From the IMG/VR virus record IMGVR_UViG_3300046517_002304, positions 1-64,000 of that record: DNA of 64,000 nucleotides; one strand, written 5' to 3'. The position numbers were made by a program, and so were the translations under genes. The stretch's first letter is position 1, and the number at the start of each line of letters is the position of its first letter. Shown here piece by piece: positions 30,017 to 54,025 of the stretch. The notes beneath the pieces are model-generated. The model searched no databases. It was not told where the DNA came from and saw nothing but the letters and a program-made list of their open reading frames with translations.

Positions 30017-30730
30017 TTACCTACAATGCAAAAACATATTGTGTTTTAGCTCAAAATTATGCTCACATTTTTGTCCATTTAGATAAACTTCATATCCGTT
30101 AGAATACAAAATGTCTAACAGCTCCTGCGGATCAAAGCCGTGATACTCCATACTGACCTTTTCAAAAAGATGTGTTTCAATTTCCAGCTTCGGCTTCTTC
30201 TTAAGCATCTCTTTAGCTCCACGCAATACGGCTATTTCATATCCCTCAACGTCAATTTTAATAACATCTGGTGCAATCCCCAAATCATCTAAAGCTATAG
30301 TTTCTACTTCGGTTCCACGGCTATCAACCATTTCTTCAGATATAAACTTCTTCATCCCGCTTTTTTCATCTGCTATATTACTGTATATCTGATAATCTAT
30401 AACGTCATTTAGCTGAAAATTACGCTTTATAATAGGAATATTGCTTGGATTAGCTTCAATAACTATAATTTTAGACTTAGACCGCATTACCATGCTTAGG
30501 GCAACGCTTCCTATGTTGGCGCCTACATCTATAACAACATCGCCAGGAGAAATCAAATCTCTTAAAAAAAGGTTTCTTTTATTCTGAACTTCAACAGCAT
30601 CATCCCAAGAACATTTTAAATCATCGCAAATAGTTTTTAGACCATACCAGTTTTCATCACGATCATTGGATATGCAAAGCTTAAACCAATTATCCCAAAC
30701 TTTATGATGCTCAATATACGGGTATACCAT
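30017..30730 (-). CDS. FkbM-family methyltransferase
   Basis: IDVGANIG, IEAN, IKIDVEGYE.AVLRGA. Confidence 0.9.
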   Translation of the reverse strand: MVYPYIEHHKVWDNWFKLCISNDRDENWYGLKTICDDLKCSWDDAVEVQNKRNLFLRDLISPGDVVIDVGANIGSVALSMVMRSKSKIIVIEANPSNIPIIKRNFQLNDVIDYQIYSNIADEKSGMKKFISEEMVDSRGTEVETIALDDLGIAPDVIKIDVEGYEIAVLRGAKEMLKKKPKLEIETHLFEKVSMEYHGFDPQELLDILYSNGYEVYLNGQKCEHNFELKHNMFLHCR

Positions 30731-30767
30731 ATGTTATTTACTATCAAGAACTAATCTAAATATAGCA

Positions 30768-36914: not shown

Positions 36915-37378
36915 TATATCACGAAATCCTTAACTAATTTAATAAAATCTCTATTAGCCAACTTTGCTCTGGGGGCAGTAAGTATTCCGCTGCACTCATT
37001 AACTTGCGTAATCCCGCTGCAATTAAAGTATATGGAGCCAGTACAACAATCTGCATTCCATGGATCAGAATGAACAACTTCACCGTGCCATACAACATTA
37101 TTAAACTTATTAGAAATTACATTAGCCCATTTGATTCCATCGTCACTAAACCATATGTCTATTATGAATTCTGAAGGAGCACTATACTCAGTGGGAATAG
37201 CTCTCAAATCTTCAGAATAGCAGCCTGATACCCATCGGCTAAATGGGAGGCAGTTCCAGAAACCAGAACTAATGTAAAACTTATTATAGCTATCTTCTAA
37301 TTTAGCTGGTGGATTCCATAAAACCAAATCAGAATCTCTTACTACAAACCTGGTTTGCATTATATCACGAAATCCTTA
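36908..37378. repeat. 25-bp exact direct repeats flanking one ORF
   Basis: TTTGCATTATATCACGAAATCCTTA at 36908-36932 and 37354-37378. Confidence 0.92.
36914..37360 (-). CDS. Hypothetical Trp/Cys-rich protein inside the repeat-bounded cassette
   Basis: 148 aa; ends KDFVI like the upstream gene. Confidence 0.65.
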   Translation of the reverse strand: MQTRFVVRDSDLVLWNPPAKLEDSYNKFYISSGFWNCLPFSRWVSGCYSEDLRAIPTEYSAPSEFIIDIWFSDDGIKWANVISNKFNNVVWHGEVVHSDPWNADCCTGSIYFNCSGITQVNECSGILTAPRAKLANRDFIKLVKDFVI

Positions 37379-37902
37379 TCGCTAAGAGAAACTAATCCAA
37401 TCCTAATTCCACTATCCTTGGTCACTTTTTTACCAATATGCTTAGTGGCATTCCAAATAATTGACTTAATATAAATTTCAAATTTCCTGTTAACCAATAG
37501 TTTAGCGCTTACATCTGGAAAAAGCTCTTTGGGAACATATCTATTAAGAATTAAATCAAGCATATTCTCTTGATGATCCCCAAAGGTACGCTTGTTCGCA
37601 CCATGGTGTCTACGATTTTCCCAAAGCCGCTCTAGTTCGCAAACTATACAAAAAATAAACTTATCCTTACAATATGCCTTAGCAATTTCTAATGAATCCT
37701 CAATATATGTCTGCCGCTTAAAATAAACAGCAGCCTTAGTTAAGGCCATTTTTGTTTCTTGAATTACGTCTTCAATTTCTAAGAAACTTCCGCTGTTGTA
37801 ATTGCGTCTTAATAGCTTCCAAGAAGCATCATAACAAAGACGACCATACTTCTTATCTAATAACGCATACTCATCATTAGTTATCGCAAACTTATTCTTC
37901 AT
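37360..37902 (-). CDS. Sigma70 region-2-like protein (possible phage sigma factor)
   Basis: KYGRLCY..EDVIQETKMALTKA...KFEIYIKSIIWN; no region 4 visible. Confidence 0.45.
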   Translation of the reverse strand: MKNKFAITNDEYALLDKKYGRLCYDASWKLLRRNYNSGSFLEIEDVIQETKMALTKAAVYFKRQTYIEDSLEIAKAYCKDKFIFCIVCELERLWENRRHHGANKRTFGDHQENMLDLILNRYVPKELFPDVSAKLLVNRKFEIYIKSIIWNATKHIGKKVTKDSGIRIGLVSLSDKDFVI

Positions 37903-37924: not shown

Positions 37925-39145
37925 TTATACTCCTTTAGTTTCGGCTACATTTAGTTTCAACCCAGGGTAAAAATCATCATCTTTCTCCAATACATGAATT
38001 ATACTATTCAAAGTATCTGTATCTCCAGCGTCAAGCTGTACGACATAACCGTCATGAATATTAAACATGATATTTTTGTGTTTGTGGAAAAGTTGAATTA
38101 GTTTATGCTGGCAAACTGTTGCAGCGGCTGACTGTATCAGGAAATTCCCAACCTGATATTTATGATCAACCTTCTTAATTCTACCAAAATAATTCTGCGC
38201 TACCGTGTCGCTATTAACGCTATCCAACCACTTAAAAACATCGGGAATTCTATTTTTTATTAAAGACAAAATCTTAACAACATGCTCCCTGCCTATACCA
38301 GAATTTTCTGATAACGTGTCTGGACCACCACCATAAATAAATGGTAAAAATAATAACTTCATCTTCTTGCGAGATGCAGATGAGCATTCTTGCCTAAACA
38401 AATCTTTGTATAAGTTACAATAAAAATCAGAGCCGTTAATAAGTTTAAGCAACTCTTTGTCTTGTGACAACCACTGTAGAACAGAAACTTCCATATGCTT
38501 GTAATCAACTGTCCAAATTTCCTTATTATATCCACTTGGTTTTATCTTCTCTTTAATTTCCGGCGACAAAGTATGAGGGACAATATATCTTTCATTTACC
38601 TTGCTACACGACATCCTGCCTTGTGACTGCCCTTCAATCTCATAATTAGTATACCGGACATTTTTGCCGACGATTATTTTCATATTCTCTAATGACGGAA
38701 TGACTTCGGTAATCAAAGGAAGATGAACATTTTTATAGACCGATTTCCATGTATCCGGCAACTCTTTAAAAATACCAACGGCATCTAAAAACGTCTCGGG
38801 GCAAGAAACGGGTAAGCCGCAAAAAGCGGCAATTACCTTTAAATCTATAATCTTTCCATCAAATTTAGAAAAACCGTTATCTCCAAATCTATGTTTTATA
38901 TGCGAAACAAATCTCTTAAAATCATATACTAAAATCGTTTTCTGATGAAAGAGTTCTTGCAAAACTGTTAAATTACTTCTAAAACTACCGTCTATTTCAA
39001 AATTAAAACAGTAGTTTTGATTACTCAATTCTAGTTTTCCAGAAAATGTATCTGTGAAATCAACGATTTCTGGAATCGTCCTAAAGAAAAGAACGCCGCT
39101 ATCCTTAAAATGACTAATATGACTCACAAAATCAAATAAAAGCAT
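37925..39145 (-). CDS. Short family A DNA polymerase-like protein
   Basis: GRMS, motif A DYKHME, motif B RKKMKLLFLPFIYG, NFLIQSAAA, motif C IHDG. Confidence 0.8.
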   Translation of the reverse strand: MLLFDFVSHISHFKDSGVLFFRTIPEIVDFTDTFSGKLELSNQNYCFNFEIDGSFRSNLTVLQELFHQKTILVYDFKRFVSHIKHRFGDNGFSKFDGKIIDLKVIAAFCGLPVSCPETFLDAVGIFKELPDTWKSVYKNVHLPLITEVIPSLENMKIIVGKNVRYTNYEIEGQSQGRMSCSKVNERYIVPHTLSPEIKEKIKPSGYNKEIWTVDYKHMEVSVLQWLSQDKELLKLINGSDFYCNLYKDLFRQECSSASRKKMKLLFLPFIYGGGPDTLSENSGIGREHVVKILSLIKNRIPDVFKWLDSVNSDTVAQNYFGRIKKVDHKYQVGNFLIQSAAATVCQHKLIQLFHKHKNIMFNIHDGYVVQLDAGDTDTLNSIIHVLEKDDDFYPGLKLNVAETKGV

Positions 39146-39154
39146 GTGTACCAG

Positions 39155-40279
39155 TTATCGTGAAATTTCCACTGCGACGTTAAGATTCAACTTAAAAAAC
39201 TCATCTTGTATGACGGATGCTATGTATTCTGCGTGTTTGTCTTGTGCTAAGATACAATCATGAACTGTCAATATCTGCACATCTGGATTTTCACTCATTA
39301 TCCTTTTGCAAATCTTATGAATGAATATATCCGACTCAATCTTCTGCAATTCTCTGGCTAAGTTTTTATAATCATCTTTCTTGTAGAACTGGATAGCATC
39401 TGAAATCGTTGGGAAATACTTAGCAAATTTTTTTGCAGTCTTTCTACCAAAGAAAACATTTTTAAATAACCGATTTTTTATATTTTTTTTATCACTTTCA
39501 TTTATTTTATATAATTCAGAACAATGATTGTAGAATACACCCATCTCAGTTAGTTTTCTATATTCTAAAACATCCTGATTATTTTTAATATAATTTTTAT
39601 TAATCAATTTATCAACAAGCAGATTCAATAAAAGAGGCTGACAATTCTTTATATCAATTTGGGTTAACTTTTCGCCATTAATCATTAATTGCTTACGATG
39701 AGATCTTTTAAGAGTTGTAATATTGGTGTGCGTTCTGCCATAAGTATCAACATGCAGATATACTTTTTTATTTTTAATCCAATCCACCACCTTGGCATGA
39801 TGTATATTTAACTCGCCAAAATGACTATCATCAATGCTAGTTTGCTTTAAACACGCATATAAATATTCATAAATATTGCCTTTAGCAGTTAATTTATGAC
39901 GATTTCGCTTCTTTAGCTTCTTAATAAGCACCGCATCATCTACGGAAACAGTTCTATATCCATGTTCGTAAAGTGGAGCAATACGATAATTTTGAGAAAA
40001 TCTCCCAACACTATAGGTTTTATTAACTAAAATAACATCGCAATCTATCAATAATTTTTTGTATTCCAAGTACCTTCTAGTAAACATGTTTTCAAGATAC
40101 TTCCAATGCAGCTTGGCCCAAAGATCATGGTCTCTACCATGCGTCATACCCCGCACACACACCATTTCAACAAACCAATACATGCGCTGCAAATGCTTCT
40201 TAGACTTCAAATGTTTATACTTTTCCGGTATGATATTTTCTAAAATTAAATTTTTAGGAACAAATATTCTGTATTTCAT
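39155..40279 (-). CDS. Divergent superfamily-A polymerase-like protein
   Basis: GRTHTNIT, DIKNCQP, LQKIES, TVHDC; probable start MKYRIF at 40279. Confidence 0.6.
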   Translation of the reverse strand: MKYRIFVPKNLILENIIPEKYKHLKSKKHLQRMYWFVEMVCVRGMTHGRDHDLWAKLHWKYLENMFTRRYLEYKKLLIDCDVILVNKTYSVGRFSQNYRIAPLYEHGYRTVSVDDAVLIKKLKKRNRHKLTAKGNIYEYLYACLKQTSIDDSHFGELNIHHAKVVDWIKNKKVYLHVDTYGRTHTNITTLKRSHRKQLMINGEKLTQIDIKNCQPLLLNLLVDKLINKNYIKNNQDVLEYRKLTEMGVFYNHCSELYKINESDKKNIKNRLFKNVFFGRKTAKKFAKYFPTISDAIQFYKKDDYKNLARELQKIESDIFIHKICKRIMSENPDVQILTVHDCILAQDKHAEYIASVIQDEFFKLNLNVAVEISR

Positions 40280-40487
40280 ACAGTGTACATCGTGCCAAAT
40301 GCATTTTTCCATTAGTGGTATTCGAAAAAAAACACAGGGATGTGTGGCTAATGATTGATAGGACACAATTTAGATCTTTTTAGTACTTTAAGTACCTAGG
40401 ATTTTATTGTACTTTTCTAATATTATTAGTACTTCTGATTTATTAATACAAACATTAATGATTAATCATTGAGAGTACGATAAACAT

Positions 40488-41174
40488 ATGATGTTAATAG
40501 AAGAATTGATCTTTAATTATAAGATAACTGATGATAAAGAGAAACTATCAGTATTCATATCTCATCTCTTCTACTCATACGTACAGAAACTCTTTCCTAA
40601 TAATAACATGGTTAGGTTCTCTTGGAAGAAAGACCCTAGAGAAAACATTCTCTTTAAATACTGCTATAAACTTGTAAATGAAACAAGCGGTAAACTTAAC
40701 GCTACCGACTATGAAATATACCTAAGAGCACAAATAGCTGTAATTAAGAACGTTCATGATGTTCTCGCTAAAGATATCATGATTTCCGAACGTTGCTTAG
40801 TAGGAGAAAAGGCGTGGAAAAGATATGTATTTTACAAACATCAGTATGATTTAAAATTACAGCTTAAGTCTGCGAAAGAAGTTGGGGTAAGCTTGCATGA
40901 TTACAGTTTCGTTATTAATGAATTAAAACGATCTAAAAAAGTGCTGACCGCTAAATTAGGTGATTTAAATAAAGAATCTATAGAAAAAGCAGTAAATGGC
41001 AGAGCTATTTTTAGATGGCATGCCGTTGGTTTAATTTCAGGTTACTATCTTGCCTTATCGGAAATTGCTAAGAAAAGCCAATTTTATCCTGACTTGTCAT
41101 TGTATAGAGACGGCCTGACGCCTGAAGTTAAAGAGTTTTTTAAACAAGAATTTGGCTATGAGATTATAAATTAA
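40488..41174 (+). CDS. Hypothetical protein
   Basis: 228 aa, divergent from the polymerase-like pair. Confidence 0.7.
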   Translation: MMLIEELIFNYKITDDKEKLSVFISHLFYSYVQKLFPNNNMVRFSWKKDPRENILFKYCYKLVNETSGKLNATDYEIYLRAQIAVIKNVHDVLAKDIMISERCLVGEKAWKRYVFYKHQYDLKLQLKSAKEVGVSLHDYSFVINELKRSKKVLTAKLGDLNKESIEKAVNGRAIFRWHAVGLISGYYLALSEIAKKSQFYPDLSLYRDGLTPEVKEFFKQEFGYEIIN

Positions 41175-41500
41175 GCCATTTGCGACAGATGAAAGTTTCT
41201 GCGATCTTTAATTTTACTAAACTCCCCGATCAGATCTCTATCTAGGCTAATTTTTTTAGCTTCCATGTCAGATTGACCGTCTTTTTTGACGGTCCACTCA
41301 ACACTTATCTGCCCATGTTTTAACATATCCATCAGTTTTTCGGCAGCGTATGGACCTTCCCAAGGCATATTGTATAACGGGCGTATTACGTATTTGCGGT
41401 CATTGCCTTCTAAAAGAAGCATGGGTGGCTCTTCTGCGACTTCCTGCCCGAATAGTGGGACACCATAGTTTTCTTTGATGTACTGTAAGAAACTCTTCAT
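41171..41500 (-). CDS. GYF_2 (DUF4339)-like protein with capsid-targeting-like N-terminus
   Basis: GPYAAEKLMDMLKHGQISVEWTVKKDG; starts MKSFLQYIKE. Confidence 0.6.
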   Translation of the reverse strand: MKSFLQYIKENYGVPLFGQEVAEEPPMLLLEGNDRKYVIRPLYNMPWEGPYAAEKLMDMLKHGQISVEWTVKKDGQSDMEAKKISLDRDLIGEFSKIKDRRNFHLSQMA

Positions 41501-41679
41501 TACTTACAAATACATGGATTACAACTGCAACCCATTCCCTTGCAACAAGCGGTTGGCATGCCTGGTTTGCACCCGCAATTTTTGGTGCAAGAGCACTGAG
41601 ATGTATTAACAACCCCAAATAAACGGTACCCACCGGCGATGGCCAGTAAAATTGCTGTTACAAATATAAAGTTTTTCAT
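41500..41679 (-). CDS. Exported metallothionein-like Cys-rich peptide (59 aa)
   Basis: Manual translation MKNFIFVTAILLAIAGGYRLFGVVNTSQCSCTKNCGCKPGMPTACCKGMGCSCNPCICK; AGGAG SD and TAAATA upstream; TAATG-coupled to the next gene. Confidence 0.8.
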   Translation of the reverse strand: MKNFIFVTAILLAIAGGYRLFGVVNTSQCSCTKNCGCKPGMPTACCKGMGCSCNPCICK

Positions 41680-41707
41680 AATTTTTCTCCTATAGTATTT
41701 AGTTTTT

Positions 41708-42637
41708 TTAGTAGGAATCTAGTAAATGCATGATAATATGAGCCATTTTCTTTACATGCATGGATGGTGATAGATGTACGTCCCACGAAACAATATCTGG
41801 AACCCATCTATGGACTCTAATCGGCGATGAGATTTCTTGTCCGATACACTTAACTAAACCTGTTTTAGGATTGAAGCTCATGTCAATATTGAATTGCTCC
41901 AGTCGTTCGCCATCAACAGGTCTCATCATGCCGCCGCCGCGAACACTAAAGTAAGTAATGTATCTGTTGTTATTTATTCTTTTAGTTTTCTCATAGATAA
42001 ACCATTCTGGCTTCTCATTTTGAACCCAACTGTCTATCATCTTCACCAAAGGCAGTAGATCGTATTCTTTTTCAGGGTTTAATGGTTTTTCTTTTACTAA
42101 ATGCTCCATATTTTCCCATATTACATCTATAATTTTATTCTCTACATCTGGATCTTCTGATTTTGGCTTAAACTGTATTAATGGTATAGCAGATATACAC
42201 TGCCAAACTAACTCGCCCTCAAAATTATGGCTTAAAACCGATACAAATGCCTTCCAAGAACCGAGTGGGCTTAAGTCTAGTTCTATTGCGCCTTCATTGT
42301 ACTCGCCATGAGCAATATCTTTATTGCTATTTTTATTTTTGTGACCCCATATAATGCTATCACTCCATATCTCTATTGGTTTTAGCGCACCTAACTTTCG
42401 CTTAGACAAAGTATCAATAATTACACCCGCTTCTGCGGGTTGAATAGCATGGTTGTTTTTAGATATTGGTTGGAGTTTACTAAGTTTTCCAAAGCCGAAA
42501 ATATCTTTGTGCTTCCCGAAGTATTCTTCTGGCTCTGCTCTTTTGGGAAGTTTTTGAAGATTTGGGTCTATAACAGGCCGTTCTTTGGATTTAAATCCAA
42601 ACATGTCTTCTTGCATCCAGTTAGCGAAACTTCCCAT
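41708..42637 (-). CDS. Hypothetical protein with capsid-targeting-like N-terminus
   Basis: MGSFANWMQED; TAAATA-N4-ATG. Confidence 0.7.
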   Translation of the reverse strand: MGSFANWMQEDMFGFKSKERPVIDPNLQKLPKRAEPEEYFGKHKDIFGFGKLSKLQPISKNNHAIQPAEAGVIIDTLSKRKLGALKPIEIWSDSIIWGHKNKNSNKDIAHGEYNEGAIELDLSPLGSWKAFVSVLSHNFEGELVWQCISAIPLIQFKPKSEDPDVENKIIDVIWENMEHLVKEKPLNPEKEYDLLPLVKMIDSWVQNEKPEWFIYEKTKRINNNRYITYFSVRGGGMMRPVDGERLEQFNIDMSFNPKTGLVKCIGQEISSPIRVHRWVPDIVSWDVHLSPSMHVKKMAHIIMHLLDSY

Positions 42638-42660
42638 ACCTTATTTAGTTGAATTTAAAA

Positions 42661-43191
42661 TTAAAACTGCTCATTAGTACCCTTCACAAAATTATAAAAA
42701 TCAGCTAGTTCATCATTTGACCTAGGAAGATACTTATTTTGAGAACGGTCAAAATCCTGCGCAGCCTTTCGTCCGTACACCTTTATTACTCTTGCTTTAG
42801 ATGGGTCGTTAACAAAAAATTCGTTACCGAAACCCCGGCTAGATTGGAAATATTGATTTCTTGGAACTTGAGTCATGTCAATTAAGGCTACGTATTGCCT
42901 ATTTCCATAGCTTGACCAGTTAGCCAGATGAGATGTGATCATAAATTTACCAACGTCTACCCCTCCTGTAGCCAAGCTAGACATATCTCTAGGGCCTTTG
43001 TTTGGGTCTATCTGAAAATTAGGATCATCTGTCCAATGCCAATACAAACCATGCTTAATTTGTATTTGATAATCTTGATAAAAATCTTTTAAAGATGGAG
43101 CCTTTATGGCTTCAGCGGCAAGTCCACGAAGAATGGCGGTTTTTAGGTTCCACTTGCGAGATTCTTCTAGGAATAGCTTAAATGAACTCAT
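42661..43191 (-). CDS. Possible ADP-ribosyltransferase-fold protein with capsid-targeting-like N-terminus
   Basis: LYWHWT..FMITS..NEFFV spacing resembles the H-Y/S-E ART core; starts MSSFKLFLEE. Confidence 0.45.
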   Translation of the reverse strand: MSSFKLFLEESRKWNLKTAILRGLAAEAIKAPSLKDFYQDYQIQIKHGLYWHWTDDPNFQIDPNKGPRDMSSLATGGVDVGKFMITSHLANWSSYGNRQYVALIDMTQVPRNQYFQSSRGFGNEFFVNDPSKARVIKVYGRKAAQDFDRSQNKYLPRSNDELADFYNFVKGTNEQF

Positions 43192-43208
43192 GCAATATAT
43201 ATTGTATG
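43189..43208. promoter_or_regulatory. Bidirectional TATATA box with ATG 4 nt away on each strand
   Basis: CAT-gcaa-TATATA-ttgt-ATG. Confidence 0.7.
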
Positions 43209-43496
43209 CAAACCTTTAAACAGTATTGGGAATCTCGGGTTTTAGGCGCAGATGACATTAAGCGAATTATCTTTAACTCGCTTGGGATCAATATTGACAG
43301 CGCGCAGGAAAAAGACTATCTTAACAATAATCTTTCTGACTACAGCAACCGAAATGAGATTTTACGCGCACAGGCGATTAGAGAGTTGCCAAATTTTGAT
43401 GAAATCAAAAGAGTTATTACCGTAGACTACAACAAATTCACAATCGGTACTCTAATAAGCTACATAGACAAATTGGTAAATCCAGGAGAAATCTGA
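43206..43496 (+). CDS. Hypothetical protein with capsid-targeting-like N-terminus
   Basis: MQTFKQYWES. Confidence 0.7.
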   Translation: MQTFKQYWESRVLGADDIKRIIFNSLGINIDSAQEKDYLNNNLSDYSNRNEILRAQAIRELPNFDEIKRVITVDYNKFTIGTLISYIDKLVNPGEI

Positions 43497-44293
43497 TGCC
43501 ACAAAGATTTTTGATGTCGTATCCAGAGTTTTTTGACGTAAATTACGAAATCAACACTTGGATGGACGTAAAAAACAAGCCTGATAACTTTCTTGCCAAT
43601 AAACAGTGGCGAAGACTGTATCAGTTGCTTATTACATTAGGGGCAAATGTTGACGTTGTAGACGGCCATAAAGATTATCCTGATTTAGTTTTTACTGCTA
43701 ATGCAGGAACGGTTAAGGGAAAGGTTTTTATTCCTTCTAATTTCAAGTATAAGGAACGACAAGGCGAATCTTTGATATATAACAGATGGTTTGCCGAAAA
43801 TGGTTTTGAGTTAAAATCTCTACCATCAGAAGTTTCTTTTGAAGGGCACGGAGACGCGATATTCTTTCAAGACAAACTGATTCAGGGACATGGATTTCGT
43901 AGTTCTTATGAATCTCATCAAAAATTAAGCGACTTATTAGAAACCGAAGTTGTGCCTGTAGAGTTGACGAATGGTCATTTTTATCATTTAGATACTTGTC
44001 TTTTTGTTCTGAATCAAGCCACTCCATCTATTATTTATTTCCCAGGCGCTTTTTCACCAGAGAGTGTGGCGGTAATTGAAGGATTACCATGCGATAAACT
44101 ACAAATATCAGAAGATGAAGCGCATGGATTTGCTTGTAATGCAATACAGGTAGGAGGGTGCGTGATTTTATCTGAAGGATGTGAAGAAACTGCGGAATGG
44201 CTAATGGATAGAGGGATTAAAGTATTTTTTAACGATGTAAGCCAGTTTAACTTGGCTGGTGGCGGGAACGCCTGTATGGTGTTGGAAATTTAA
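43496..44293 (+). CDS. Amidinotransferase/DDAH-family (arginine dihydrolase-like) enzyme
   Basis: FLMSYPEFFDVNYEINTWM, PDLVFTANAG, FEGHGD, YHLDT, GGNACM. Confidence 0.88.
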   Translation: MPQRFLMSYPEFFDVNYEINTWMDVKNKPDNFLANKQWRRLYQLLITLGANVDVVDGHKDYPDLVFTANAGTVKGKVFIPSNFKYKERQGESLIYNRWFAENGFELKSLPSEVSFEGHGDAIFFQDKLIQGHGFRSSYESHQKLSDLLETEVVPVELTNGHFYHLDTCLFVLNQATPSIIYFPGAFSPESVAVIEGLPCDKLQISEDEAHGFACNAIQVGGCVILSEGCEETAEWLMDRGIKVFFNDVSQFNLAGGGNACMVLEI

Positions 44294-44296
44294 TTA

Positions 44297-44695
44297 TTAT
44301 ATGGGAGTAAACTTCCCAAACATTTTGCATGCGGCATCGCATAATTGAATTGACAACGATATATTCTTTTGATCAATGGCATCTTTTAATTCAAAAACCT
44401 TTTTCTGAAGTTCTTTTAGGAAATCTAATATTTTAATTGTCGCGCCATATTTTGGTCTTACAGACATTTTATCTATACCATCCTGTATTGCTTCGTAACA
44501 TCGCCCCAACATTCTTTCTGCCCAATGAATATCTCTAGTTCCCTTGCTGGCCATATCCAGCATTTCTTTAGTCATAAATATTGGCTCGCCGATTGAGTTT
44601 AGGATACTTATCATAAATCCAGTAAACATTTCTTCATCCGTATACATTGGAGCATCGTTTCCGTCATTCTCTAGCCACAGTTTAAAACTACTCAT
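44297..44695 (-). CDS. Hypothetical protein with capsid-targeting-like N-terminus
   Basis: MSSFKLWLEND. Confidence 0.7.
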   Translation of the reverse strand: MSSFKLWLENDGNDAPMYTDEEMFTGFMISILNSIGEPIFMTKEMLDMASKGTRDIHWAERMLGRCYEAIQDGIDKMSVRPKYGATIKILDFLKELQKKVFELKDAIDQKNISLSIQLCDAACKMFGKFTPI

Positions 44696-44901
44696 TTATG
44701 CTTCTTTCTTCGCTTTCGCTTTTTTTCATGGCTAGTATAATAACCACCCCATGACCATACTGGCATTGCCATAGGCAGTCCAAATCCCCCACCGGCACCA
44801 CCATTTGATCCGGCTCCGCACATACCTCCTGTGCCGCCAGCTCCCGCCATCCCACCGCCACAACCACATTGTTCCATACGCCATTGTTCAAATGTTTTCA
44901 T
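44692..44901 (-). CDS. Small Gly-rich protein with basic tail and capsid-targeting-like N-terminus
   Basis: MKTFEQWRME..GGG..KKRKRRKKHK; TAAATA-N4-ATG. Confidence 0.7.
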   Translation of the reverse strand: MKTFEQWRMEQCGCGGGMAGAGGTGGMCGAGSNGGAGGGFGLPMAMPVWSWGGYYTSHEKKRKRRKKHK

Positions 44902-44943
44902 GCTATATTTACTATTTTTTACGCAAACATTTAATATGAATTT

Positions 44944-45516
44944 TTATGGTTTACCGAGACTCAAGGCTCTAACGCCCCATCCTAAGTATATGCCATAGGT
45001 GATTCGTTCCGCGTCAAGCATAAGCATATTGGTTGCCTTAAGCCAACTATTGATAATTTCAATGGTAATTGGTCGCTCATGCGCCTTTGACACACCGGAT
45101 ACATGTTCCGCCGACTCATTTTGAGCATCTAACGAACGATTGTCTTCTGGACATGTTATAATTAAAATTCCGCCTGGTTTTAATACGTTTCTTGTATTTG
45201 TGATTATTGTTTTAGCATCTTCATCACTAAAGTGTTCTAGTATATCTCCTAAAACAGCGACATCTGCGGTCGCATTAAATGGGAATGGTAATCTAGCATC
45301 GTGAATAATATCGGCTTGAGTTGGGCAATCATTGGCTCCAGACCATTGATTTATATCAATGTTGATAGCTTGAAAGTCATACTTTAATAAGCCGCAGTCA
45401 ATGTCGCATCCGATATTAAGAATCCTTTGCCCTTTTTGAAGGTACTTTCTTTGGAAGACATATTGATGTAGTTGGCGGCAGACTTCTAGTTTTGCGGCAG
45501 CTTCTTCTGGCGTCAT
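44944..45516 (-). CDS. Class I SAM methyltransferase (Methyltransf_11-like)
   Basis: ILNIGC, NIDI, LPF, DILEH, VLKPGG.LIITCP. Confidence 0.85.
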   Translation of the reverse strand: MTPEEAAAKLEVCRQLHQYVFQRKYLQKGQRILNIGCDIDCGLLKYDFQAINIDINQWSGANDCPTQADIIHDARLPFPFNATADVAVLGDILEHFSDEDAKTIITNTRNVLKPGGILIITCPEDNRSLDAQNESAEHVSGVSKAHERPITIEIINSWLKATNMLMLDAERITYGIYLGWGVRALSLGKP

Positions 45517-45553
45517 AATAGATTTTCCTTATAGTGAATCTATTATAGGTGGT

Positions 45554-45739
45554 TTATTTTACTTTTTTAACCTTCTTCTTTTTAATAATTATATTTGGCA
45601 TATCACAGGCGCAACATCCGGTTTCAGAAGTTTCATCTTTTTGCGGCATAGATTGAGTGTTGGATGAACAGGCATCGCTTCCTGCCATATTGTCTAAGGA
45701 AGTTTCTTTAATTTTAATCCACTCATGGAAAGTTTGCAT
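45554..45739 (-). CDS. Small protein with capsid-targeting-like N-terminus and Lys tail
   Basis: MQTFHEWIKIKE..CCAC..KKKKVKKVK. Confidence 0.6.
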   Translation of the reverse strand: MQTFHEWIKIKETSLDNMAGSDACSSNTQSMPQKDETSETGCCACDMPNIIIKKKKVKKVK

Positions 45740-45750
45740 ATATATTATAT

Positions 45751-53309: not shown

Positions 53310-53326
53310 ACGATATATATGGTAGC

Positions 53327-54025
53327 ATGGAAAACGAAAAAAATCAAGACCACATTGAAATGGCTTTATTCAGAGCTGGACCTTTGCATCCTTACAGGCT
53401 TAAAATTGAAAAAATGCTCAAGGATTTACCGGTAAAAACTGGCGACATTTTGTTTCGGCTGGATGGATACGTGTTTTGGGGATTGTTCAATTTTAGCGAA
53501 ACTGTATGCACTTTAACAAAATCAAATTTTGATCATGCTGCCGTAGTTTACGTAGAAAACGAAATTCCGATGGTGGTAGAAATAAGTGACCAGGGATGTA
53601 CTTTGTTTCGCCTTGTAGATTGGGCAGATTATGTTTTTGCTTCCACTTTTTCCGTTTACAGACTAAAGACCGGACTGGATACTGACGCCAATATAGCAAA
53701 ATTGCAGGAGTCTGTCAAGACTCTTATTGCCAGCGATCCAGATTATGATTTTTCGTTCGGTAATGAAAATGGTAAATTTTATTGCACAGAGTTTGTGGCA
53801 AAGGTTTATGAAGATGCTGGTTTGCCTTTAATGAAACCCATGTTAATAAAAGACATTATGGGTGGCGGCTGGAGATACTGGCTATTTTATGCAATAAACA
53901 AATTAGCTGGAAAAATTACTGGAATGTGTTTTAACGCGGAGACTCCGATGTATTTTGTTGGTAACAATAAACAAGGAATGATGTCATCGCCGCTAATTAG
54001 TTTGATGGCTAAGATTAGTTTCTAA
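53327..54025 (+). CDS. Permuted papain-like NlpC/P60 (YiiX/YebB-like) enzyme
   Basis: GDILFR, FDHAAV, YDF, FYCTEFV. Confidence 0.8.
   Translation: MENEKNQDHIEMALFRAGPLHPYRLKIEKMLKDLPVKTGDILFRLDGYVFWGLFNFSETVCTLTKSNFDHAAVVYVENEIPMVVEISDQGCTLFRLVDWADYVFASTFSVYRLKTGLDTDANIAKLQESVKTLIASDPDYDFSFGNENGKFYCTEFVAKVYEDAGLPLMKPMLIKDIMGGGWRYWLFYAINKLAGKITGMCFNAETPMYFVGNNKQGMMSSPLISLMAKISF

What the first reader, a model, noticed from the sequence alone, without database searches (positions are those of the whole stretch)
43189..43208. A 14-bp intergenic space that appears to be a complete bidirectional promoter
Seen: CAT-gcaa-TATATA-ttgt-ATG is near-palindromic, so a single hexamer sits 4 nt from both start codons, and both genes carry the N-terminal tag. 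Related compact divergent junctions occur at 30730/30768 (two TAAATA boxes), 45739/45751 and 53309/53327. There is no room for SD sequences at 43191/43206.
Basis: seen in the sequence. Interest (0 to 1): 0.6.

Follow-up and report, generated by a model that had tools for sequence, protein, structure and literature searches.

The report
Two-way leaderless late promoter, 14 bp
In a 511-kb soil phage, one palindromic TATATA box between two back-to-back genes most likely acts as a T4-style late promoter in both directions, starting each message at its own ATG; it is a very compact variant of known mechanisms, and no RNA data exist to prove it.

Summary
CAT(43189-91)-gcaa-TATATA-ttgt-ATG(43206-08) is an 18/20 palindrome with one hexamer 4 nt from both start codons.

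It is not an isolated oddity. In the complete 511,233-bp phage genome, TA[A/T]ATA-N4-ATG opens 48 ORFs, against about 3-5 at neighbouring spacings. There is no -35 element, position -1 is a pyrimidine in 45/48, and starts are almost only ATG.

The TAAATA form of the box is the core of the T4 late promoter TATAAATA. The phage encodes a gp55-family late sigma. Box-bearing genes include tail tube, head closure, sheath stabiliser and virion proteins.

The exact 14-nt palindromic junction occurs twice (also at genome 87724), with about 0.05 expected. A 595-kb relative shows the same box at 4-5 nt. T4 itself keeps its box 13-32 nt from the ATG.

The N-terminal tag matches the T4 capsid targeting sequence (IPIII begins MKTYQEFIAE). 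A gp21-type prohead protease and a gp23-type capsid protein are present, so both genes probably encode capsid-packaged cargo made late.

No RNA data exist, so start sites and two-way activity are inferred. Verdict: a new variant of known kinds.

The parts
43189..43208 (.). Divergent junction: CAT, a 14-nt spacer, then ATG; 18/20 palindromic
43196..43201 (.). Shared palindromic TATATA box (late-promoter -10-like element read on both strands), 4 nt from each ATG
42661..43191 (-). 176-aa gene with a CTS-like N-terminus (MSSFKLFLEE). Member of a widespread uncharacterised family. The model shows a weak ADP-ribosyltransferase-like fold.
43206..43496 (+). 96-aa gene with a CTS-like N-terminus (MQTFKQYWES); no family match
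43496..44293 (+). 265-aa enzyme of the DDAH / arginine-deiminase superfamily. Its start overlaps the stop of the 96-aa gene (TGATG), so it probably lies on the same rightward message.
42642..42647 (-). TAAATA box 4 nt before the ATG at 42637 (309-aa tagged gene, MGSFANWMQE); the next leaderless-type promoter on the leftward side
44906..44911 (-). TAAATA box 4 nt before the ATG at 44901 (69-aa tagged, Gly/Cys-rich protein with a basic tail)
45741..45749 (.). Overlapping TATAAT (minus) and TATATT (plus) boxes in the 11-nt junction 45739/45751, each 4 nt from an ATG. The minus gene is tagged (MQTFHEWIKIKE). The plus ORF is unverified.
30735..30762 (.). Junction 30730/30768 with two separate TAAATA boxes (30735-30740 for the minus gene, spacer 4; 30757-30762 for the plus gene, spacer 5) between two methyltransferase-like genes
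53314..53319 (.). Single TATATA in the 17-nt junction 53309/53327: 4 nt from the tagged minus gene and 7 nt from the plus gene (Peptidase_C92-like)

Best explanation
The 14-bp spacer is a two-way late promoter made only of a -10-like box. The window is the first 64 kb of a complete 511-kb soil phage with T4-type head genes. The phage has a regulon of about 50 genes in which TA[A/T]ATA sits 4 nt before the ATG. TAAATA is the last six bases of the T4 late promoter TATAAATA, which needs no -35 element. I infer that host RNA polymerase carrying the phage's gp55-family sigma melts this box. I also infer that it starts at the A of ATG, which is preceded by a pyrimidine. The mRNA would then begin with AUG and be translated as a leaderless message without an SD. 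TATATA reads the same on both strands. With 4 nt on each side, a single box can therefore serve the leftward gene (start 43191) and the rightward gene (start 43206). The two open complexes would overlap completely, so each initiation event picks one direction. Both genes carry an N-terminal T4-type capsid targeting sequence and are probably capsid-packaged cargo made late, together with head assembly. Shown: the motif statistics, the sigma, protease and capsid homologues, and the match of the tag to T4. Inferred: which factor reads the box, the start site, leaderless translation, activity in both directions, and packaging.
For: Position-locked motif: TAAATA at spacer 4 occurs 34 times against about 3 at other spacings, and TATATA 14 times against about 2 (z = 16 and 9 in an unbiased hexamer scan). 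Matrix of the 48 sites: no -35, not-T at -11, purine at -2 in 40/48, pyrimidine at -1 in 45/48; pyrimidine at -1 is 47% at control ATGs. Start codons are ATG in 48 cases against 2 GTG and 1 TTG, which is background level. A gp55-family sigma lies at genome 95290-95760: Sigma70_r2 only, phrog_234 'late sigma transcription factor' at E = 1e-10, T4 gp55 control at 2.9e-69, and pairwise E = 2e-5 with T4 gp55. In that alignment the DNA-pocket residues N13, L54, F86 and T99 are identical and Y97 becomes F; the residue list is from PMC7892883. Box-bearing genes include tail tube, head closure, tail sheath stabiliser and virion structural proteins. Promoter classes are block-specific: the box is nearly absent from 250-425 kb, where a different motif (TAGTTATCC) occurs 146 times. 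A ribosome signal would not partition like this. The relative LR756511.1 (595 kb, helicase 47.6% identical) has the same box at spacers 4 and 5 (21 and 29 sites). Pyrimidine at -1 stays anchored to the ATG there (21/21 and 23/29). A second identical junction lies at 87724, in front of the head-closure gene. Tag: T4 IPII and IPIII begin MKTYQEFIAE and IPI begins MKTFKEF. In IPIII, residues 4 and 7 target and residues 8 and 10 direct cleavage (PMC9026906). Peptidase_S77 scores E = 1.4e-25 and Gp23 E = 4.8e-87. Tagged genes are enriched for the box (16/34 against 24/696, p = 3e-13), and their mature parts are unrelated. No phage RNA polymerase was detected.
Against: No RNA data exist for this phage, so no 5' end is known. 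The box lies one base closer to the presumed start than in T4 (TATAAATA at -13 to -6, PMC7892883) and two closer than TANNNT leaderless promoters (PMC3160421). The first two bases of the T4 octamer are not conserved (only 2 of 48 sites read TATAAATA). No gp45-type clamp was found, gp33 was not searched, and the polymerase is family A, so T4-style clamp activation is unsupported. T4 gp55 used directly as a query found nothing. The major capsid gene itself has an SD-type leader, not the box. Orthologues of the 176-aa gene in four other contigs do not keep the arrangement. Some of the 48 sites may not be real genes (for example 44027 and 16183).
Confidence: 0.65

Rival explanations
1. The box is a promoter, but it is read by the host's primary sigma or by the phage's other sigma (region 2 plus region 4, genome 457362-458009), not by the gp55-like factor. 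The rest of the picture (leaderless, two-way) stays the same.
For: A complete r2+r4 sigma is encoded. TATATA and TATAAT-like variants resemble a generic -10. -10 boxes next to ORFs that give leaderless mRNAs are common with primary sigmas in some phyla (PMC3160421, PMC12340547).
Against: There is no -35 signal in 48 sites. The final T of TANNNT is replaced by A. The box is 2 nt too close for sigma-70 geometry. Sigma-70-type promoter hits in 40-47.5 kb are below chance (23 against 27.7) and none lies at the junction. TAAATA equals the T4 late core, and virion genes carry it.
Confidence: 0.12
2. The box acts at the RNA level as an SD-independent translation-initiation signal (an AU-rich ribosome or S1 landing site) on longer transcripts that start elsewhere. 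The junction is then not a promoter.
For: No 5' ends are known. The box is AU-rich and lies where an SD would lie. Orthologues elsewhere use SD or coupling.
Against: Sequence and spacing are too specific for an unstructured AU tract. The motif equals the core of a known promoter, and the matching sigma is present. The motif is confined to particular genome blocks and absent from 250-425 kb. The pyrimidine-A signature at -1/+1 is a start-site feature. A transcript reaching either gene from upstream would have to run antisense through the opposite gene.
Confidence: 0.1
3. Only one direction of the palindrome is used. The symmetry is a by-product of gene packing, and the other gene is expressed by other means.
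For: Two polymerases cannot occupy the site together. The rightward 96-aa gene has a less canonical tag (E at 9, not 10). In 53309/53327 the same box is well placed for only one gene.
Against: Both sides match the full matrix: A at -11, G at -2, T or C at -1, spacer 4. The exact arrangement recurs at 87724, with 0.05 expected. No alternative promoter-like site or SD is available for either gene.
Confidence: 0.1

Closest known systems
Bacteriophage T4 late promoters (TATAAATA, gp55 / gp33 / gp45)
   Same: A -10-like A/T box with no -35 element. The core TAAATA is identical. A gp55-family, region-2-only sigma is encoded. The box precedes virion genes. The head module (gp21-type protease, gp23-type capsid) is T4-type.
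   Different: The box is 4 nt from the ATG here. In 112 kb of T4 the octamer is never within 12 nt of an ORF-opening ATG and peaks near 28 nt, with SD leaders. The first two octamer bases are not conserved. No clamp was detected and gp33 was not searched. TATATA is used as a self-complementary variant.
Leaderless genes with a -10 box abutting the ORF (Actinobacteria, Deinococcus-Thermus; Thermus phages YS40 and Lalka27a)
   Same: A promoter element at a fixed short distance from the start codon, no SD, and the initiator codon at the mRNA 5' end (PMC3160421, PMC12340547, bioRxiv 10.64898/2026.04.20.719267).
   Different: Those use TANNNT (first T about 12 nt upstream) or TAGGGT read by host-type holoenzyme. 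Here the box is T4-late-like, starts at -10, and serves one temporal class only in a phage that also uses SD for many genes. In the jumbo phages with mapped 5' ends, no leaderless transcript was detected in phiKZ (early infection), and AR9 5' UTRs are 26-491 nt (PMC8244752, PMC5312081).
Symmetric bidirectional bacterial promoters (Warman et al., bioRxiv 10.1101/2020.01.31.928960; PMC12825309)
   Same: -10 elements on opposite strands coincide because the element is symmetric. Divergent starts are closely spaced. One binding event excludes the other.
   Different: In E. coli the commonest separation is 18 bp, and the genes have leaders. Here the predicted starts are 15 positions apart. The hexamers coincide completely. 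Both starts are the start codons themselves, so the whole intergenic region is 14 bp.
T4 capsid targeting sequence (CTS) of internal proteins IPI, IPII and IPIII
   Same: An N-terminal stretch of about 10 residues with aromatics at positions 4 and 7, an aliphatic residue at 8 and Glu at 10. It is portable on unrelated proteins. A gp21-type protease is present.
   Different: About 34 or more tagged genes, against 3 IPs in T4. A one-residue-shorter form (M-x-F-K-x-W-L) is also common. Cargo reaches 704 aa. Packaging and cleavage are untested.

Membership tests
T4-type (gp55-dependent) late promoter | -10-like A/T box of the TATAAATA type with no conserved -35 | tested here: met
   48-site matrix: TA[A/T]ATA is fixed by the search pattern, and there is no information at -35. 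TAAATA equals the last six bases of the T4 octamer (PMC2988020, PMC7892883).
T4-type (gp55-dependent) late promoter | Full 8-bp consensus TATAAATA | tested here: not met
   Only 2 of 48 sites read TATAAATA. The base before the hexamer is T in 3/48.
T4-type (gp55-dependent) late promoter | Phage encodes a gp55-family sigma (region 2 only) | tested here: met
   Genome 95290-95760: phrog_234 at E = 1e-10; T4 gp55 control hits the same PHROG at 2.9e-69; Pfam Sigma70_r2 only; BLASTP against T4 gp55 at E = 2e-5.
T4-type (gp55-dependent) late promoter | Co-activator gp33 and sliding clamp gp45 | tested here: inconclusive
   A T4 gp45 query and PF09116 found nothing. A blank is not evidence of absence. 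gp33 was not searched.
T4-type (gp55-dependent) late promoter | Precedes late (virion) genes | tested here: met
   Tail tube, head closure, tail sheath stabiliser and virion structural proteins carry the box. The major capsid gene does not.
T4-type (gp55-dependent) late promoter | Transcription depends on the factor and starts about 6 nt after the box | not testable with these tools
   No RNA runs hold this phage.
Leaderless mRNA gene | Promoter -10 element at a fixed short distance from the start codon, with no SD | tested here: met
   Sharp peak at spacer 4. The spacer sequences are not SD-like.
Leaderless mRNA gene | AUG strongly preferred as the start codon | tested here: met
   48 ATG against 2 GTG and 1 TTG at spacer 4.
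Leaderless mRNA gene | mRNA 5' end is the A of AUG | not testable with these tools
   No RNA data. Indirect support: pyrimidine at -1 in 45/48 sites, and it stays anchored to the ATG at both spacers in the relative.
Symmetric bidirectional promoter | -10 elements on opposite strands overlap through sequence symmetry | tested here: met
   A single self-complementary TATATA at 43196-43201, with both flanks matching the matrix.
Symmetric bidirectional promoter | Divergent start sites 7-25 bp apart, both productive | not testable with these tools
   The predicted starts at 43191 and 43206 fall in the range (bioRxiv 10.1101/2020.01.31.928960), but they have not been measured.
T4 capsid targeting sequence | N-terminal decapeptide: aromatic at 4 and 7, aliphatic at 8, Glu at 10 | tested here: met
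   Gene 43191 (MSSFKLFLEE) fits at all four positions. Gene 43206 (MQTFKQYWES) fits at positions 4 and 7 only, with Glu at 9. T4 IPII and IPIII read MKTYQEFIAE. Residue roles come from PMC9026906.
T4 capsid targeting sequence | gp21-type prohead protease and T4-type prohead present | tested here: met
   Peptidase_S77 at E = 1.4e-25; Gp23 at E = 4.8e-87.
T4 capsid targeting sequence | Portable tag on otherwise unrelated proteins | tested here: met
   34 tagged genes. With the tag removed, only two paralogue pairs share similarity. The tag pattern matches 3 of 2613 internal Met positions.
T4 capsid targeting sequence | Protein is packaged and the tag is cleaved | not testable with these tools
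   The phage is uncultured and no proteome is available.

The most novel reading that the evidence does not exclude
A clade of huge soil phages with T4-type heads runs a late regulon of about 50 genes almost wholly on leaderless messages. Each gene, many of them capsid-cargo genes with a targeting tag, carries its own gp55-type box locked 4-5 nt before the ATG, so transcription start and translation start are the same nucleotide. The self-complementary TATATA form yields a complete control region of only 14 bp for two divergent genes. Direction would be chosen per initiation event, stochastically or (speculatively) by the polarity of an activating clamp.
Probability: 0.5. Interest if true: 0.65.

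Novelty: new variant of a known kind. Interest (0 to 1): 0.55.

Why it matters
If confirmed, the finding would matter in three ways.

1. It would show that T4-type late transcription can be coupled to leaderless translation across a whole regulon. A search of the held paper library for 'leaderless', 'T4-like' and 'late promoters' together found no paper. T4 itself does not do this.

2. It would give a very small natural two-way promoter (one hexamer, 14 bp). That is a clean system for studying direction choice at symmetric promoters, and a compact part for co-expression.

3. Box plus tag gives a sequence-only rule for annotating late, capsid-packaged (probably injected) proteins in uncultured huge phages, where most genes have no known function.

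Tried and rejected
- **RNA evidence:** The look-up of sequencing runs found only DNA holders. Read laying on four runs gave identical contigs, hence no polymorphism to gauge constraint.
- **Close relatives of the junction:** The search for related loci with both flanking proteins returned only a 100%-identical contig.
- **Phage DNA search:** the window has no DNA match in the phage collection.
- **T4 gp55 as a direct query on the genome:** no match. Only the profile search (PHROG) and the pairwise BLAST detect the homology.
- **T4 gp45 and PF09116:** nothing found. This is not evidence of absence.
- **Phage-encoded RNA polymerase:** PF00562 and PF00623 were blank. PF00940 was also blank, but its control was uninformative.
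- **Sigma-70 consensus scan of 40-47.5 kb:** hits fall below the shuffle mean and none lies at the junction.
- **Conservation at orthologues:** four contigs carrying homologues of the 176-aa gene show other signals instead (TAAATA-N7, SD plus GTG, none, coupling after a portal gene). The arrangement is lineage-specific rather than gene-specific.
- **Function of the 176-aa protein:** no Pfam or PHROG match. Foldseek found nothing at E <= 0.001. VIA-align reached at most Z = 4.3, although its hit list is dominated by ADP-ribosyltransferase folds. I treat this as a lead only.
- **Archaeal or eukaryote-virus style TATA box:** considered and rejected. The distance to the ATG is wrong, and the genome is a tailed phage.

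Full report
**Observation.** Window 43189-43208 reads CAT-gcaa-TATATA-ttgt-ATG.
- It is an 18/20 palindrome.
- The hexamer (43196-43201) lies 4 nt from the minus-strand ATG (A at 43191; gene 42661-43191, 176 aa, MSSFKLFLEE...).
- It also lies 4 nt from the plus-strand ATG (A at 43206; gene 43206-43496, 96 aa, MQTFKQYWES...).
- There is no SD-like sequence.
- An in-frame ATG at 43182 exists, but the tag starts at 43206.
- Contigs from independent soil and rhizosphere runs are identical across the junction.

**Context.**
- The window is the first 64 kb of a 511,233-bp virus record with direct terminal repeats, rated complete.
- It is held by soil and rhizosphere metagenomes.
- Its nearest named relative is the 595-kb uncultured phage LR756511.1 (helicase 47.6% identical).
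- It has a gp23-type major capsid protein (E = 4.8e-87) and a gp21-type prohead protease (Peptidase_S77, E = 1.4e-25).
- It also has tail tube, head-closure and sheath-stabiliser homologues.
- No phage RNA polymerase was detected.

**The hexamer is one instance of a genome-wide signal.**
- TAAATA followed after exactly 4 nt by an ATG that opens at least 40 codons occurs 34 times, against 2-9 at other spacings. TATATA does so 14 times, against 0-6.
- In an unbiased scan of all hexamers at all offsets these are z = 16 and z = 9.
- The 48 sites give the matrix not-T, T-A-[A/T]-A-T-A, N, N, purine (40/48), pyrimidine (45/48), ATG. Nothing is conserved near -35.
- Pyrimidine at -1 is 47% at control ATGs.
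- GTG and TTG at that position are at background level (2 and 1).
- Among 730 predicted genes, 40 carry the exact arrangement. A minor tail has spacers of 5-7, and few have longer leaders.

**Why a promoter, and which kind.**
- T4 late promoters are an 8-bp TATA box at the -10 position with no -35 (PMC2988020). In the cryo-EM structure gp55 flips the bases at -12, -9 and -8 (PMC7892883). TAAATA is the last six bases of that box.
- The phage encodes a 156-aa protein with sigma region 2 only. It hits the PHROG 'late sigma transcription factor' (E = 1e-10), the same family that T4 gp55 hits (2.9e-69).
- It aligns with T4 gp55 at E = 2e-5. Pocket residues N13, L54, F86 and T99 are identical and Y97 becomes F.
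- Genes behind the box include tail tube, head closure, sheath stabiliser and two virion structural proteins.
- The box is almost absent from 250-425 kb, where a different motif (TAGTTATCC, 147 copies, 133 on the minus strand) dominates. Such block-specific classes fit promoters, not a ribosome signal.
- A sigma-70 consensus scan around the finding is below chance.

**Why leaderless.**
- The box leaves 4 nt before the ATG, so no SD fits.
- The pyrimidine-A step at -1/+1 is the usual start-site context.
- In LR756511.1 the same box occurs at spacers 4 (21 sites) and 5 (29 sites). Spacer 5 is the T4 geometry.
- In that relative the pyrimidine stays next to the ATG in both classes (21/21 and 23/29). 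The conserved step is therefore tied to the ATG, not to the box.
- T4 is different. In 112 kb of its genome TATAAATA is never within 12 nt of an ORF-opening ATG and peaks near 28 nt. Its IP and lysozyme genes show SD leaders.
- -10 boxes abutting ORFs that give 5'-AUG messages are known in Actinobacteria and Deinococcus-Thermus (PMC3160421, PMC12340547) and in Thermus phages (bioRxiv 10.64898/2026.04.20.719267).
- In the jumbo phages mapped so far, no leaderless transcript was detected in phiKZ (early infection), and AR9 5' UTRs are 26-491 nt (PMC8244752, PMC5312081).
- The held library has no paper with 'leaderless', 'T4-like' and 'late promoters' together.

**Why two-way.**
- TATATA is self-complementary, and 4 + 6 + 4 = 14.
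- Both flanks fit the matrix: A at -11, G at -2, T or C at -1.
- CAT-N4-TATATA-N4-ATG occurs exactly twice in the genome (43189 and 87724), with 0.05-0.07 expected. No other palindromic hexamer occurs in this frame.
- The second copy lies between a tagged 134-aa gene and the head-closure gene.
- Other divergent pairs use two boxes (30730/30768; 246193/246244) or one well-placed side (53309/53327).
- The relative has an 18-nt pair with two overlapping boxes.
- Symmetric -10 elements giving divergent starts are established in bacteria, with 18 bp the commonest separation and binding in one direction excluding the other (bioRxiv 10.1101/2020.01.31.928960; PMC12825309). Here the predicted starts are 15 positions apart.

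**The tag.**
- T4 IPII and IPIII begin MKTYQEFIAE, and IPI begins MKTFKEF.
- The first 10 residues of IPIII are the capsid targeting sequence. Residues 4 and 7 act in targeting, and residues 8 and 10 in cleavage by gp21 (PMC9026906). Otherwise the IPs are diverse (PMC3012670).
- The window's tags fit: F at 4, W/F/Y at 7, an aliphatic residue at 8, E near 10.
- 34 of 730 predicted genes carry the pattern, against 3 of 2613 internal Met positions.
- 16 of the 34 also have the exact box, against 24 of 696 untagged genes (p = 3e-13).
- With the tag removed, the proteins are unrelated apart from two paralogue pairs.
- About half of the box genes in the relative are tagged too.
- Both junction genes are therefore probably capsid-packaged cargo made late. 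The region 41.5-45.7 kb is an island of such genes.

**The flanking genes.**
- The 176-aa protein belongs to a widespread unnamed family (99 hits).
- The members' N-termini vary by lineage: some carry the CTS-like tag, others a different recurring start (MNWYK...), and others none.
- One homologue follows a T4-type portal gene.
- Its model (pLDDT 84.6) gives only weak matches, but these are almost all ADP-ribosyltransferase folds. This is a lead, not a finding.
- The 96-aa gene has no match. Its stop overlaps the start of a DDAH / arginine-deiminase-superfamily enzyme.

**Limits.**
- There is no RNA evidence.
- No clamp was found and gp33 was not searched.
- The box is 1 nt closer to the presumed start than in T4.
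- The arrangement is not kept at orthologues in four other contigs.
- The capsid gene itself is SD-led.
- I used genetic code 11 throughout.

Noticed in passing
Genome G000 250-425 kb (outside the window); one copy at window 14716 (-): A second, stronger gene-proximal motif, (T/C)TAGTTATCC(A/G)T. It has 147 copies, 146 of them within 250-425 kb and 133 on the minus strand. It usually ends about 8-11 nt before an ATG, followed by a weak SD. It is almost mutually exclusive with the TA[A/T]ATA box. It is probably another promoter class (early or middle), perhaps read by the r2+r4 sigma at 457362-458009.
   Followed up: partly
window 41171-45739 and genome-wide: An island of genes with a T4-type capsid-targeting tag, with starts at 41500, 42637, 43191, 43206, 44695, 44901 and 45739. 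There are 34 or more tagged genes genome-wide, up to 704 aa. Further variants have W at position 4 (MKTWTQY... at genome 157167 and 157396). This is many more than T4's three internal proteins.
   Followed up: partly
window 44692-44901 (-), 45554-45739 (-), 41500-41679 (-): Small odd proteins. One is a tagged 69-aa Gly/Cys-rich protein ending in a Lys/Arg run. One is a tagged 61-aa protein ending KKKKVKKVK. One is an untagged 59-aa protein with a hydrophobic N-terminus and a Cys-rich tail, preceded by a TAAATA box plus an SD leader. The basic tails recall the basic T4 internal proteins.
   Followed up: no
window 42661-43191 (-) and homologues P0002-P0099: The same conserved core (…GLAAEA…HGLYWHW…RGFGNEFF…) carries different N-terminal tags in different lineages. 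About 26 homologues are CTS-like, and about 20 begin MNWYK(K/I)AQ, possibly a second lineage-specific targeting tag. The fold search hints weakly at an ADP-ribosyltransferase-like fold (Z <= 4.3).
   Followed up: partly
genome G000 87724-87743: A second exact 14-nt TATATA junction, between a tagged 134-aa gene (MGFKQFLYES) and the head-closure (T4 gp4-like) gene.
   Followed up: yes
window 43496-44293 (+) and 53327-54025 (+): Two enzymes lie next to tagged genes. One is a DDAH / arginine-deiminase-superfamily protein (PF19420, E = 3e-12). The other is a Peptidase_C92 permuted papain-like amidase (E = 9e-14). Neither carries the tag.
   Followed up: no
window 37360-37902 (-) and 37925-39145 (-): A 180-aa ORF has a weak Sigma70_r2 match (E = 0.016, below the cut-off). 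It sits next to a 406-aa ORF that matches only the C-terminal part of family A DNA polymerase PHROGs. The adjacent 403-aa ORF (39155-40366) has no match.
   Followed up: no
LR756511.1 (loci L024-L035): The 595-kb relative has its own additional position-locked motifs before ATGs (AGCTGTAC at about 11-13 nt, TACCTCTAAC at about 15-19 nt) and much stronger SD use. It also has an 18-nt divergent pair (382061/382080) with overlapping TAAATA and TATATA boxes.
   Followed up: partly
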